A stretch of 64,000 bases of DNA from Mytilus trossulus (taxonomy: Eukaryota), in NCBI RefSeq assembly GCF_036588685.1, contig NC_086381.1, positions 50,840,001 to 50,904,000 on the forward strand, written 5' to 3'. A model generated the notes under the pieces. It was not told where the DNA came from, did not search any database, and saw only the letters and a program-made list of their open reading frames with translations. The position numbers and the translations under genes were made by a program. Below, piece after piece: positions 28,001-34,000 of the stretch. Numbering within the stretch: position 1 is the stretch's first letter; the number at the start of each line of letters is the position of its first letter.

Positions 28001-31000
28001 CGAGCCTCCTTAAGTGAAAAAAAAACTTTTACTTTTTTACTTCATCATTAATAATTAGATTTTTTTTGGGGAAAAACACTCTAAACTGAAAAGTAAAAAA
28101 ATAATTAACCTTGAACTATTAAATAATAATTTCACAGGTTATAAAAAGAATTGTACACAAAATATTCAGAATATATTCTTCCTGTGATAAAGTTTTATTA
28201 ATTTTGTATTTTATAGATGAAGATTTCTGTTTGAATGACCAGAGTTTCTTTAAAACCTTGACTACCCATGGGGGTCTTGCTTTATAGATTACTCTATTTG
28301 TCATGAATATCTGTACATCATAGGGGGTCTCATTGGGGGGTTTCGATCCCGGATCCCGCTTACTGTTTTGTCAGATTCCTGTATCCCGCTTACACTATGT
28401 ACGTAAGCAATCCTCATTTTTTTGTCATTTTCCGTGTCCCGCAAGACCTCATTCCCCGTTTTCATGCCACAATAATTTGACTTTCACGTGTCACGCTTAC
28501 AAAAAATTGGCAATGCTGCGTCACGCTTAGACCCCATTGAGACCCACATCATAATTTCATCTTTACAGAGATGTTTCAATTCAAAAGGAAGTATATAATT
28601 ATCCAAACTTGAACTGTACATGTACCTTTTTCAGAATATTAACACAAGCAAATTAAACAAATCTTTTTATTAATTCACACTAAAACCATAGATCTTTTAA
28701 AAAACATTTTTAAATGTTAATTCAATAAATAGAAGATAATTAATAAATTTTCTCAGCTTAGAAAAAAAAGCAGAAAATATGATTTTTTTTTAGCAGCATA
28801 TGCATGAAGTAATGAAAAACAAATTAAATCCAATAAAAAATCATATAATAAAATCAAATATAGGTGCTTTTGCAGTGTACATAGTAGAAAATAAAACTGA
28901 TAAAGTTCCTAAAAGATTCCATCTGATCAAGGTGGACTAAAATAAAAGGCTATTTCTTTCATCAGGGATGTTCGATTGACAATAAAATAATCTTGATGCA
29001 AATGGCTTGCAACAAATCTGATTGGAGTATTTTTCCGATGATTTAGAAAGTGTTACAATTTTTCAAAATGCTTATAGTTTTTTCTTGAGAAGAATATCTC
29101 TAAATTATGTAGGCAATTCAAACAATACCTGATCTAGTGAAATCAATGGAGTAACATACCTGCCAACATTTCAAAATGACAATGGGGGTTTTGCTTGCAA
29201 GATGGCTGTCATAGTCCTAAAAAACTTTTCAAGGGGGCCTGCCAATACATTTTAATGTTATTTTTTGGCTATTTCATACTTTTATAAGCCTAAATTCATT
29301 GTAAAATTAATTGTTTTGTTTAAATTGTGGACAAAAATTGCTAAAATTTCAATTTGGGAGCCTCAATGTGGGAAATCCTCCACAAATAGTGACAGTTGGC
29401 AGGTATGGAGTAATAAAAATAATAAATCTAATATTAATCATATGAAAGGTGTTGAAAAGATTTGGTTTGTCTGATCAATAGTCAACATAAATATAAATTA
29501 ATCAAAGTACATTAGTGTTTATTATATTCTTGATAGAACATGACTATTTATAGAATAATTAACTTACAAAGAATTCAAATAGAGAAAATATTCAACGAGT
29601 GACCAAAAAACACATTAATTCATGAATGCACGCAGCGCATGAGTTAATTATCAGTGTTGTTCGGTCATGAGTTAAATATTTTTCGATATTTGAATTCTGT
29701 GATTAGTAATTAATTTTATCACATTGGCAAATGGCTTTTTTTATGAAATTAAAGTAGAAAATGTAAGATACTATATCTTTTTCTACGCGTTCACAATTTG
29801 TTTTGATCTGATGTTATCAACGTCTTGAAAATGCCTTTTATTGTATGACGTCAGAGGAGAGAAATAACCACGTTTATTTCACATGTGAAATTATCTGTTT
29901 TTTTTCACTGGGAAATCAATGTTATTCCTTGCAACCAATGTATAAAATAAAATTTTCAAATAATAAATGAGAATTTCATGGAATTTCATGAGTAAAATAG
30001 AGACTTTATACAACCTATTAAACTCATTTAAACAAAGATTATAAATTGTTCTGAACTTCACTGATTAGTATTTGCTCAATATTATTTTGGATATTTTGGA
30101 CAAAACCAAGTCCATTTCAATATTAACAGATTGCTTTCATCATGTTCATGGAAAAAAAACTTTTTATATAATATCATAACTTTTAAATTTTTTTAAACTT
30201 TTTTCTCAGACAAACCATAGACTTCAACAACAAATCATATACACATGTATTTGTATCAAAACTCTTGCTTAATATAAAAGATATTATCATGAAAGTTTGA
30301 CTTTTGTAAGAGGAGGGGTAATACCTTTTCATATTAACCTGTTTTGGCCTTTTTCAAGGTGTTGTTAACTGTAATCTGAGATAAATTCAAACTGTTAACT
30401 GTTTTCAATCCACTGTGTTAACTGTTATCAGCATTTTTGCATTTGTTATTAACTGTTTTTACCAAAATTGAGGTGTTGTTAACAAACCGCTAGTGCCCCC
30501 TTTAATGACCAGGCCCTTATTTCACAAAAAGTAAAACAACAAATAATCTCAATCCATGAACAATTCAGTTTACTTATGATCAATTCTAGACATACGATTT
30601 TTTTGTAAAATGTAGGCAAGGAGAATCTTAGTGTAACATTGCATTGTTCAGTGGTAAAAGAATTATAATAATATTTATTTTCATGGTCTTACATAAATAT
30701 AAAATGAGAGTCTGGATTAGGGTCCTTTGTCCATCCTTTATTTTTCAGACCATTTTATATCTAAAAATTCTAATTACTGATAAAATAGTTTTTTTACAAA
30801 TATTACTCTAAACAACCCTCAAGTGGAATCATTTTGTTAACAATATATAAGCAAGAGTTTTATTGATACAGAAAGACAGATTCAGACAGTGCAGTGCTGT
30901 ACAGACTCACTTGGTTTTTTGTGACCACTTTCGTAATTGGGATAGCTTGTTGACTAGGAAAATCCCAATTCCTCTAGCTAAAACATGCACAAATATATAC

Positions 31001-34000
31001 TGATTATGAAAGCATAATGAATAATGAACAAATATGGCTAGCATCTACACATCCAAACTAAGAATTCCATGCTGTGATGTCCCTGTAAAAAACTACCAAG
31101 GTGGATTAACAGCTCTTTAACATTTTTCCTTTGAACAACTTTGTAATTTTATGAATATTTCATGCCAATTGCAATCTGCAAAAAAGTTTTATGAACAATG
31201 TTTAGCCGATTTTTGCAGATACTTCTTATTAAAGAGCAACAATGAAGCAGAACAAAAATCTTTAAAATTGAAATCTAAAATTATTAAATCATTTCAAAGC
31301 AAAACCAATCTTAGTTCAAAAGAAAAATGTCAATGAGCAGTGAGCAATGAAGGGGGTATAACTCTTCTTATCAAAAACAAATTTCACAGACATCTTTATC
31401 TACATCTGCTTATTTAGAAAGATTCTTTCATGTAAATTATCAAAACAGATTTCCTTTTAAATATGAAAACTACTTCAACCTTGTAATTTCCTTTATGATT
31501 CTTTTGTTTATTGTGAAAAAAAGGCAGTAGATCTAGAGTTATCTCCCCTTCATATGAGAAATAGACTATAATATTTTCTTTTCACCCGAACTCACTTGTT
31601 TGTTTTACTATCTCTAGACCATTTCTTCAGCTGAGACAGCTTGTTTACCAAGAAAATGCCTATTCCTCTGGCTAAATTGAATAAAATTAGGAATATTTGT
31701 TAATTTTCTATTTGATTTTTTTCTAACTTATGGGATTTATTTTAAGCTTCAGGTAATATTATTTGATTTATAGAAGACTTTCAAACAGGAATGATGGAAT
31801 AGTCAAGCGTAACACCTAATGTCCACTCCATCTAGCGGCAGGGAAAAACAACTAGAGACTCTCATCTTGGTCTATGAGCATTTTCAAAAATGAACCCTTT
31901 CCAACAATGTGGACTAGAATAAAATTCATGACAAAAATAATTCATGACCAAAATCCCTTTTTTTGGTTTATTATGTATTGCAGATAAATTTTTCTGTGTC
32001 CAATTTCTCTCTATTAACATTGCCTGAAACACACACAAAAAAAAGCTAAAAAATACACCAATAAAAGCAATCTCTCCTATAAAGAGTAAATGAACTATTT
32101 CATCAAAATTTTACTAATTAGTAGAAATTGTCTTGCTGAAAATTTTTGCTACCTAAAGTGTCAATCTATCATTTATAGTTTTGAAGATAGTAGGCAAATC
32201 ATAAACTATTGGTAAAAATCGTCATTAAAGAGCACATACTCCTTCAAATAGTTGACTGATGATTTTGGCTATTTGACTTATTTGTAGATTGATCAGGTCT
32301 TGCTGATCAATGTGTAGATCTTATCATTTAAACATTTTTTCCAATGACAGATTTTCTCCTTTCATATCAGTTTTCAAGTTAAAAAGACCTAACATACAAT
32401 TTGCCCCTTTGTTCTATTTTTAGTCATGTCGGCCATTTTGGTTGGCATGAGGGGTCATCAGTCACAATTTCTAAATTAGATACCTTTATAATGATTGAGA
32501 CCAAGTTTGGTTCAATTTAAGGCCAACCAGTTTTAAAGAATACAATTTTTGTAAAAGTTAACAACCACGGACAACAATGGAAGCCAGGTGATGAGAAAAG
32601 CTCACTTGGCCTTTTTAGGCCAGTAGAACTAAAAAGGTTCACAATGGCAAAGAAGATCTAAAAAATTTTACTACTTTTAAATTGGGCCCGGTTTAGAAGA
32701 GACAGATACTTTAATGTTTACTATAAAAAGTTCACGTTGTCACACAAATCATTTGGATAAAGAAATTTTAAATAGAAATGACAAATGCACATAGTGTGAG
32801 TAATGAAAATAAATATGTTGGTTCATCAAAAGTATAAAAAAAAAGATACCTTTGTATAAAAAGATTTTCTTAAGCAAACAAAATGTTTAAGTTAAGGCAT
32901 ATAAATCAGAGAAGATGCAGTGATTGAAGAAAGTTAAGTGTAATATGTCTTAACCCCTATGACAATAAGGTCTAAATTTTAAATTCAGTTTTTTTGGTAG
33001 TATTGATCATTTCTTCCTGACCCCTTTTTTCAATTCAGCAAATTGCTATAGTGCTCATGTTTTTTTTTCTATTCAGCTCATTGATAGTGTACTGTACCAA
33101 TGTTTCTTTTCTTAGTTACCTTTCCCACATGGTTTCATGATCCATGTTGTGTTGGGGTTCTTTCTGAACTCTTCTACAAATAAGTTGTAGTCTGCTGGTA
33201 ACATGAATGTCAGAGGAATAAAATCTGTAAAAGAAAATTATGAATTTTCAACTGCAACATTGATTAAACTTTGTTCTTTCTAATTCATATTTTTTTTTTT
33301 ATTACTTTGAGCAGCATTAAGAAACTCTCACTACTAATTATATTGGATAACTTATATCTAACCTCTAAGATGTATTCTCAATCCTTTTGACTATTCTAAG
33401 ATCATTATGCTAATGTGTCTTCATCTCTGATATTTTTTGGAGGGGTAAGTGCTGCTCATGCAGTCTATAGTTTTCAATGTTGTGTGTGTACACTGTTGTT
33501 TTTTGGTTGTTTTTTCATTCTGCCATGACAATGAACTTTTCTCATTGACTTATGAGTTTGAATATCACTTAGGTAACTTCCAGTCCTCTCTTTTCTGAAG
33601 CTGATGTTTAAGATATTTTCAAATGATACACTGGTACAATGTCACAATGACAAATCTAGACTTTGAAACTTGCATTCAGATCATCTAACTGTACCGAGTC
33701 AAATAATAAAATACCAAAACTATTTTTATCCCTGACAAAAAGAAATATAATTTTGTCAACCCAAATTAAGCTCTTTTAGAGCTACAAGTGATAAAAATCT
33801 GAATTTTAGAACATGGTCATGTGAAATTTAAATTTGTGTATCAGGCTTAACGAAATAACTTTTCAAATACCAAGATGAAGAAATCTGCCATTTTCATCCT
33901 TTTCTGCCAATGGACTTCCTTCTTTTTCCAAATCTTTTCTGTATCTTTTTATATTTTTAACCATTAAATCTTTTCTTGTTAACTCCACATGATTTGGAAA

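What the first reader, a model, noticed from the sequence alone, without database searches (positions are those of the whole stretch)
30911..31671. Duplicated, apparently mutually exclusive active-site exons in TTLL1
Seen: two tandem paralogous exons, 5a (76 nt, [25 protein letters not shown]) and 5b (67 nt, [22 protein letters not shown]). Both have TTTAG acceptors, AA|GTGAGT donors and identical phases. The first 15 residues are identical although 9 of those 15 codons differ, all synonymously, which points to purifying selection on both copies. Including both exons gives AAC-TAG, an immediate stop; skipping both shifts the frame. Inference: mutually exclusive splicing yields two TTLL1 isoforms that differ in the basic segment after the ATP-grasp loop, which could tune tubulin-tail or partner binding. 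I do not know of a described mutually exclusive exon pair in TTLL1.
Basis: partly seen in the sequence, partly recalled or inferred. Interest (0 to 1): 0.8.

Follow-up and report, generated by a model that had tools for sequence, protein, structure and literature searches.

The report
Mussel TTLL1 twin alternative exons
A mussel gene for the tubulin-modifying enzyme TTLL1 carries two old copies of one small exon and uses one per messenger RNA, giving two enzyme forms that public gene annotation already lists but that no paper I found describes.

Summary
On the minus strand, exon 5a (31671..31596, 76 nt) and exon 5b (30977..30911, 67 nt) of a Mytilus TTLL1 gene are tandem paralogues. They share TTTAG acceptors, AA|GTGAGT donors and the same phase. 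Their first 15 residues are identical, yet 9 codons (11 bases) differ, all synonymously.

The mutually exclusive reading is supported.
- The 5a>6 splice joint appears in contigs of 3 of 4 laid runs and the 5b>6 joint in 1 of 4.
- RefSeq already lists both forms. M. galloprovincialis X1 and X2 differ only in this exon, and M. californianus X4 and X3 differ in it plus an N-terminal extension.
- A transcript-derived protein from a bivalve about 9% diverged from Mytilus carries 5b unchanged, 22 of 22 residues.

Of 73 mollusc and other lophotrochozoan proteins inspected, 68 have only the 5a type. All 23 metagenome TTLL1 loci hold a single exon 5. 5b replaces Lys162, which is invariant in 77 of 77 orthologues, and alters a nearly invariant Arg-Asp in a TTLL1-specific insertion.

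The functional consequence is inferred, not shown. The pair is real and old, but it is an ordinary kind of splicing. This scan has also noted other exclusive exon pairs in other genes of this genome. Four literature searches found no description.

The parts
16026..42582 (-). Coding span of the TTLL1 gene, 14 coding positions, one of them held by the exon 5a/5b pair (15 exons)
   Evidence: tblastn of Mytilus TTLL1 proteins P0276 and P0381 against the window gives 15 collinear matches from 42582 to 16026. First exon 42/42 and last exon 38/38 residues identical.
33120..33224 (-). Exon 4 (..WIMKPCGK), ending with one base (G) of the Ala codon that either exon 5 completes
   Evidence: Sequence. Pfam TTL E 5.4e-7.
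31596..31671 (-). Exon 5a, 76 nt, the canonical form (..[11 protein letters not shown])
   Evidence: 25/25 identical to M. galloprovincialis isoform X1. The joint 31596>26657 is seen in contigs of runs X3, X5 and X12.
30978..31595 (-). 618-nt GT-AG intron between the two copies
   Evidence: Read. No similarity to the other introns beyond the splice signals.
30911..30977 (-). Exon 5b, 67 nt, the variant form (..LRKWSQKT)
   Evidence: 22/22 identical to M. galloprovincialis X2, M. californianus X3 and the Logan protein P0284. The joint 30911>26656/7 is seen in run X1 at depth 4.7 (table 5c).
26523..26657 (-). Exon 6, the common acceptor for both copies (the 3' end is ambiguous by 3 bases)
   Evidence: Pfam TTL E 1e-17. 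Contigs cover 26520-26657 in X3 and X5 (table 8).

Best explanation
This is a genuine pair of mutually exclusive exons, made by an old tandem duplication of exon 5 of the mussel TTLL1 gene. Each mature mRNA carries 5a or 5b. The choice yields a 423-aa canonical protein or a 420-aa variant.

The two proteins are identical in the ATP-grasp Gly-rich loop (KPCGKARGIGIF). They differ only at the end of the following helix and the start of a TTLL1-specific surface insertion: [11 protein letters not shown] versus LRKWSQKT.

Exclusivity is enforced at least by the reading frame. Both exons are 1 mod 3, so including both gives an immediate TAG and skipping both shifts the frame. Such messages should be removed by nonsense-mediated decay (inferred). 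The 618-nt intron rules out steric exclusion, and both donors are GTGAGT with AG acceptors, which I read from memory as U2-type.

5a is the commoner form in the contigs seen. 5b changes residues that are otherwise fixed in animal TTLL1. It therefore most likely alters how TTLL1 sits in, or is regulated within, the polyglutamylase complex rather than its chemistry. That last step is inference.
For: Anatomy and frame logic.

Selection: 11.0 of 11.7 synonymous sites and 0 of 33.3 non-synonymous sites differ in the shared 15 codons. This excludes both recent duplication and neutral decay.

RNA:
- The 5a>6 joint (26657>31596, skipping 4938, CT..AC on the plus strand, so GT..AG on the gene strand) is in 1 contig each of X3, X5 and X12.
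- The 5b>6 joint is in X1.
- X3 also has depth over 5b with none in the adjacent intron bins.

Public proteins:
- Isoforms X1 and X2 of M. galloprovincialis differ in 5 alignment columns, all inside this exon.
- M. californianus X4 and X3 differ in the same 5 columns plus an N-terminal extension.
- A partial M. galloprovincialis record (VDI30947.1) has 5b.
- The Logan transcript protein P0284 (407 aa, 370 of 407 residues identical to X2) has 5b at 22/22.

Conservation of the changed sites: K162 is invariant in 77 of 77 orthologues, and K163, R166 and D167 are at least 90% conserved.

The alignment to TTLL6 structures places the variable part in a ~15-residue insertion that TTLL6 lacks.
Against: - The exon 4>5b joint was not observed directly, because the laid stretch stopped short of exon 4.
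- In run X1 a 308-nt contig runs unspliced across the 5b acceptor into the intron (record 8).
- The runs are only guessed to be RNA, they are assembled contigs, and 25 joint rows were not displayed. Absence of double inclusion is therefore unproven.
- 5b had no depth in X5 or X12.
- One M. edulis gene model (CAG2226534.1, P0388) joins a shortened 5a to 5b in frame. It looks like a predictor's workaround, but it was not excluded as a real third form.
- No data on tissue, protein or activity were available.
- RefSeq isoforms are computed models whose read support I could not inspect.
Confidence: 0.85

Rival explanations
1. Both isoforms are made, but the difference is functionally neutral. The duplicate persists only because some cells or stages rely on it for their supply of TTLL1, so expression is subfunctionalised without any biochemical change.
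For: The catalytic part is identical in both copies. The differences are 2 substitutions and a 3-residue deletion in a surface segment. No functional data exist.
Against: The changed positions are invariant or at least 90% conserved in 77 orthologues from cnidarians to vertebrates. 5b is unchanged, 22/22, in a bivalve 9% diverged elsewhere. By itself this is weak, because about 2 changes would be expected by chance.
Confidence: 0.3
2. Exon 5b is a leftover duplicate that is spliced in only as noise. It yields transcripts of no use, and the RefSeq isoforms merely record that noise.
For: 5b is absent from the contigs of 2 of 4 runs and is at low depth where seen. In X1 it lies on a contig that retains the upstream intron. 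Its polypyrimidine tract looks weaker than that of 5a (one search prints both).
Against: Synonymous sites are saturated while there are zero non-synonymous changes in 33.3 sites, which neutral decay cannot give. The splice sites and frame are intact. 5b is the form in a full-length assembled transcript of another bivalve (P0284).
Confidence: 0.07
3. The second copy is an assembly or haplotype artefact of this genome.
For: None found.
Against: The copies differ at 11 of 45 shared bases and by a 9-nt length difference, and their introns are unrelated. 5b occurs in protein records from two other Mytilus assemblies and in RNA-derived contigs.
Confidence: 0.01

Closest known systems
RefSeq isoform models of Mytilus TTLL1 (M. 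galloprovincialis X1 XP_076115683.1 / X2 XP_076115684.1; M. californianus X4 XP_052066825.1 / X3 XP_052066823.1)
   Same: They are the same two proteins. The window's 5a is 25/25 and its 5b 22/22 identical to them, and the isoforms differ exactly in this exon.
   Different: They are unnamed computed isoforms. Nothing in the records seen here calls them a mutually exclusive pair, dates the duplication or notes which conserved residues change. No paper was found.
Frame-enforced mutually exclusive exon pairs from tandem exon duplication
   Same: Adjacent homologous exons with equal phase, lengths not divisible by 3, one exon per mRNA, and both copies constrained.
   Different: The gene is TTLL1. 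From what could be seen, the pair is limited to Mytilus and one unnamed pteriomorph bivalve. No competing RNA structure or regulator was identified. The inverted repeats are AT-rich and were not evaluated.
Canonical single-exon TTLL1 of other animals (human-like P0137, gastropods, oysters, scallops, annelids)
   Same: 5a is this form: K[KR]WSR[DE].. follows the Gly loop in the large majority of the 318 segments tabulated.
   Different: 5b (RKWSQKT) was found in only 5 of 422 stored proteins, all from Mytilus or the Logan bivalve P0284.
TTLL6 and TTLL7 solved structures (6vzq/6vzt, 4ylr)
   Same: The same ATP-grasp core. The exon 5 Gly loop and the following helix align with them.
   Different: TTLL1 has about 15 extra residues here ([16 protein letters not shown]) that TTLL6 lacks. 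The isoform difference sits at the start of that insertion. No TTLL1 chain was among the 22 PDB sequences matched at E up to 1e-10.

Membership tests
TTLL1 orthologue (tubulin polyglutamylase complex catalytic subunit, TTL family PF03133) | TTL-family domain | tested here: met
   Pfam PF03133 on exon 4 (E 5.4e-7) and exon 6 (E 1e-17), exon by exon. The 25- and 22-residue exon 5 peptides alone gave no Pfam hit.
TTLL1 orthologue (tubulin polyglutamylase complex catalytic subunit, TTL family PF03133) | Closest relatives are proteins named TTLL1, collinear over the whole coding span | tested here: met
   Proteins named TTLL1 from Mytilus match all exons at or near 100%. The bivalve, gastropod and cephalopod TTLL1 proteins group as expected in the tree.
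TTLL1 orthologue (tubulin polyglutamylase complex catalytic subunit, TTL family PF03133) | ATP-grasp Gly-rich loop KPxxxxxGxGIF intact | tested here: met
   K142, P143, G149, G151, I152 and F153 are invariant in 77 orthologues and present with either exon.
TTLL1 orthologue (tubulin polyglutamylase complex catalytic subunit, TTL family PF03133) | Glutamylase activity within the multi-subunit complex | not testable with these tools
   Needs biochemistry.
Mutually exclusive exon pair | Adjacent homologous exons of the same phase and similar length | tested here: met
   76 and 67 nt, the same phases, 15/15 shared residues, 618 nt apart.
Mutually exclusive exon pair | Mature mRNAs contain one or the other | tested here: met
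   The 5a>6 joint is in 3 runs and the 5b>6 joint in 1 run. Of 73 proteins inspected, 68 have the 5a type only and 4 have 5b only.
Mutually exclusive exon pair | Never both, never neither | tested here: inconclusive
   Both outcomes break the frame, by reading the exon ends and by arithmetic. Only 15 of 40 joint rows were displayed. One M. edulis model (P0388) has a shortened 5a plus 5b in frame.
Mutually exclusive exon pair | Both copies under purifying selection | tested here: met
   Sd 11.0 of S 11.7 and Nd 0 of N 33.3 in the shared 15 codons. 5b is 22/22 in P0284.
Mutually exclusive exon pair | Regulated (tissue- or stage-specific) choice | not tested
   Run identities are coded and carry no tissue information, and the single read-laying run was used.

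The most novel reading that the evidence does not exclude
The 5b isoform is a functional switch restricted to this bivalve lineage. By replacing Lys162 (invariant in 77 of 77 animal TTLL1s) and removing the nearly invariant Arg-Asp at the start of the TTLL1-specific insertion, it would change which partner subunits or which tubulin tail the polyglutamylase complex engages in particular ciliated or flagellated cells. That would make it a natural mutant that reveals what this unexplained conserved insertion does.
Probability: 0.25. Interest if true: 0.55.

Novelty: new member of a known kind. Interest (0 to 1): 0.3.

Why it matters
TTLL1 is the catalytic subunit of the main tubulin polyglutamylase of cilia and neurons. 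It has no solved structure among the PDB matches seen here. According to passages read in PMC13376646, it is inactive outside a multi-subunit complex, and residues outside the catalytic cleft matter for assembly.

A naturally selected isoform that alters a few otherwise fixed residues in a TTLL1-only insertion points to a segment worth mutating. For mussel biology it adds one more old, constrained alternative exon pair to a genome in which this scan has noted several. It opens no long-standing question, and the isoforms are already in RefSeq, so the value is modest.

Tried and rejected
1. A word search with the 45-aa open frame around exon 5b found no candidate sharing three words. This is a blank limited to proteins of 25-79 aa.

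2. A search with an insect TTLL1 (P0043, region 134-300) listed only arthropods in its best 120 of 1372, so it gave nothing on molluscs.

3. Scans of prokaryote genome contigs and viral contigs with the 5a/5b alignment found nothing that passed tblastn, as expected for an animal gene.

4. The apparent extra duplicated exons suggested by tblastn (23649/22430 and 21770/19256) are consecutive exons with over-extended alignments, not duplicates.

5. Placement of the 5b-bearing Logan protein P0284:
- With all columns it joins Mytilus (support 86/96, branch 0.24).
- With the exon 5 stretch removed it falls into an unresolved pteriomorph group.
- I therefore do not call it a mytilid. No AU test was run.

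6. Inverted repeats around the two exons are AT-rich and have no comparative support, so no docking/selector model is proposed.

7. dN/dS between species per exon could not be computed, because no genomic DNA of other Mytilus species could be fetched.

8. Supplements of papers were not requested.

The joined step was left out, and public full-length proteins were used instead.
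Full report
**What is in the sequence**

The gene lies on the minus strand.
- Exon 4 (33224..33120) ends ..ATG AAA CCA TGT GGG AAA G|gtaac.
- Exon 5a (31671..31596) reads tttag|CC AGA GGA .. ACA AAC AA|gtgagt.
- Exon 5b (30977..30911) reads tttag|CT AGA GGA .. AAA ACC AA|gtgagt.
- Exon 6 starts at 26657 behind tttcag.

With the preceding G, the two exons translate to [25 protein letters not shown] and [22 protein letters not shown]. 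Their lengths are 76 and 67 nt.

In the first 15 codons, 9 differ at 11 bases and every difference is synonymous. By Nei-Gojobori counting, 11.0 of 11.7 synonymous sites and 0 of 33.3 non-synonymous sites differ. Six identical codons out of 15 is about what full randomisation of synonymous sites would leave. That last figure is my estimate from codon degeneracy, not a tool result.

Similarity stops at the exon borders. In the whole 1.30-Gb assembly the 5a peptide matches two places only, 5a and 5b.

Read from the exon ends, 5a followed by 5b gives ..AAC AAC TAG. Both lengths are 1 mod 3, so taking both or neither breaks the frame. I did not build or search a joined model; see the steps told at the end of Tried and rejected.

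**What the gene is**

Exons 4 and 6 hit Pfam TTL (PF03133) at profile positions 42-75 and 96-135, which leaves about 20 positions for exon 5. A search of 1.84 billion representatives with exon 6 alone returned TTLL1-like proteins and many genomic open-frame fragments.

tblastn of full-length hits against the window gave collinear exon-sized matches from 42582 down to about 17950; the Mytilus proteins later extended the map to 16026. The seeming extra duplicates in those tables are neighbouring exons with over-extended alignments.

Proteins named TTLL1 from Mytilus galloprovincialis, M. trossulus, M. californianus, M. coruscus and M. edulis match the window's exons at or near 100%. The window therefore comes from a Mytilus genome.

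**RNA-derived evidence**

The run search returned 24 runs from 10 studies. All are kept as assembled contigs, and 21 of them are guessed to be RNA. I laid four of them (X1 and X3 of organism A, X5 of B, X12 of C) on 26450-32400.
- The joint 26657>31596 skips 4938 bases, with ends CT..AC on the plus strand, which is GT..AG for the gene. It is present in one contig each of X3 (depth 21.9, shorter side 27), X5 (32.4, side 78) and X12 (59.7, side 78). It is not present in X1.
- Table 5c lists for X1 a joint 26656>30911 with one other letter between, at depth 4.7. This is the predicted 5b donor joined to the exon 6 acceptor, with one substituted base at the acceptor's first position.
- X3 has depth 5.93 in the bin holding 5b and none in the intron bins on either side, so both forms seem to be present in that run.

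Evidence against:
- X1 also has a 308-nt contig (30950-31257) that runs unspliced over the 5b acceptor.
- X5 and X12 have no depth on 5b.
- The stretch did not reach exon 4, so the 4>5b joint was not seen.
- Only 15 of 40 joint rows were printed, so I cannot say that a 5a>5b joint is absent.

**Public proteins**

A metatranscriptome-like contig (L004) fetched with the 5a/5b alignment holds an uninterrupted 420-aa TTLL1 frame. Used by reference as the query, it brought up mollusc TTLL1 clusters. Cluster members were then listed.

Of 73 proteins whose exon 5 region I printed:
- 68 carry only the 5a type. These include scallops, oysters, Pinctada, unionids, Dreissena, Mya, Ruditapes, Mactra, gastropods, a chiton, cephalopods, annelids, Lingula and others.
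- 4 carry 5b only: M. galloprovincialis isoform X2 (XP_076115684.1, 420 aa), M. californianus isoform X3 (XP_052066823.1), a partial M. galloprovincialis record (VDI30947.1) and an unnamed Logan protein (P0284, 407 aa).
- 1 (M. edulis CAG2226534.1) has a shortened 5a followed by 5b in frame.

M. galloprovincialis X1 and X2 differ in five alignment columns, all within this exon. M. californianus X4 and X3 differ in the same columns plus an N-terminal extension.

The M. edulis model is consistent with use of an internal GT in 5a. That is my reading of the window against P0388. It looks like a gene predictor's way of keeping the frame, but I have no reads for or against it.

**How old and how wide**

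P0284 is identical to Mytilus X2 at 370 of 407 residues. All 22 residues of 5b are unchanged. That divergence is about as large as between Mytilus and scallops, pearl oysters or oysters, which are 89-90% identical.

In a tree with all columns, P0284 joins Mytilus (86/96). With the exon 5 stretch removed, it sits in an unresolved pteriomorph group. It is therefore a pteriomorph bivalve of unknown family.

The 23 eukaryotic TTLL1 loci found in metagenomes each hold one exon 5 match at E below 0.05. In the 12 loci I re-examined at a relaxed threshold, the next best hit had E 0.3 or worse. Among them is L006, a genomic contig whose exons read like those of heterodont bivalves. Its introns 4-5 and 5-6 are only about 190 and 390 nt and contain no second copy.

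Taken together, the pair is old, with saturated synonymous sites and presence in a second, distant bivalve. It is not general in molluscs. Whether oysters and scallops lack it in their DNA, or merely in their annotation, could not be tested.

**What the difference touches**

In an alignment of 77 single-form or 5a-form orthologues, K162, W164 and S165 are invariant, and K163, R166 and D167 are at least 90% conserved. 5b has R at 162 and Q at 166, and lacks three residues just after.

Aligned to solved TTLL6, the TTLL1 segment [16 protein letters not shown] is an insertion of about 15 residues. It lies between the helix that follows the Gly-rich ATP loop and the next strand. The Gly loop itself is identical in both exons.

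No TTLL1 chain was among the PDB matches. Passages read in PMC13376646 state three things: TTLL1 is inactive alone, it acts in a complex predicted with eight subunits, and residues outside the catalytic cleft are needed for complex assembly.

From this I infer that 5b more likely changes assembly or regulation than catalysis.

**Mechanism of exclusivity**

- The 618-nt intron excludes steric hindrance.
- Both donors are GTGAGT with AG acceptors. I read this as ordinary U2-type; it is recalled knowledge, not a test.
- The frame rule removes double inclusion and double skipping, presumably through nonsense-mediated decay.
- Whether a regulated choice is superimposed is unknown.
- The inverted repeats found are AT-rich and unsupported by comparison.

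**Novelty and verdict**

Four full-text searches gave no paper describing this pair. I saw listings and abstract starts only, except PMC13376646, where I read passages. The searches were:
- TTLL1 with 'mutually exclusive': 32 papers, 15 listed.
- TTLL1, TPGS1 and cryo-EM.
- TTLL1 with Mytilus.
- 'Mutually exclusive exons' with 'tubulin tyrosine ligase'.

Supplements were not consulted. RefSeq nevertheless already lists both proteins.

This scan has noted several other exclusive exon pairs in other genes of this same genome (macroH2A, PBRM1, ELOVL4, NipSnap and others). I did not check those notes.

It is a new member of a well-known kind of alternative splicing. Its one interesting feature is that the variant replaces residues that are otherwise fixed in animal TTLL1.

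Noticed in passing
window 26644-26743 (minus-strand gene): The exon 6 acceptor region is tandemly duplicated: two 50-nt copies at 72% identity. This gives a second ..cattttcag acceptor 50 nt upstream of the real one. Using it would add 50 nt and shift the frame. No joint to it appeared in the rows shown.
   Followed up: partly
window 27050-30630 (intron between exon 5b and exon 6): Contig depth in the hundreds to tens of thousands in all four runs, with many contigs 5-10% diverged. These look like transcribed or multi-copy repeat elements inside the intron (tables 2 and 3).
   Followed up: no
window 33120-33135 and 31650-31671; proteins: The loop KPCGKARGIGIF, with Arg where vertebrate TTLL1 has Gln, is the general state in the molluscs, annelids and brachiopod listed. 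It is not a peculiarity of this gene. The two TTLL6 sequences in the PDB matches differ at the aligned position (ARG in 6vzq, CQG in 6vzt).
   Followed up: partly
L012 722-826 and 897-1040: A metagenome contig of an unknown animal holds two tandem copies of TTLL1 exon 3. The first matches only 35 of 48 residues before diverging. It could be another exon duplication or an assembly artefact.
   Followed up: no
P0151 (686 aa, Logan): A protein with two TTLL1-like stretches, showing the exon 5 motif twice and scoring 1002 bits against a 420-aa query. It may be a tandem TTLL1 fusion or a chimeric contig in an arthropod-like source.
   Followed up: no
P0388 (M. edulis CAG2226534.1) against window 31596-31671 and 30911-30977: A public gene model that keeps both exon copies in frame by ending 5a early. 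It also carries other oddities, a dropped K and a repeated PLKCYI. It is probably an ab initio error.
   Followed up: partly
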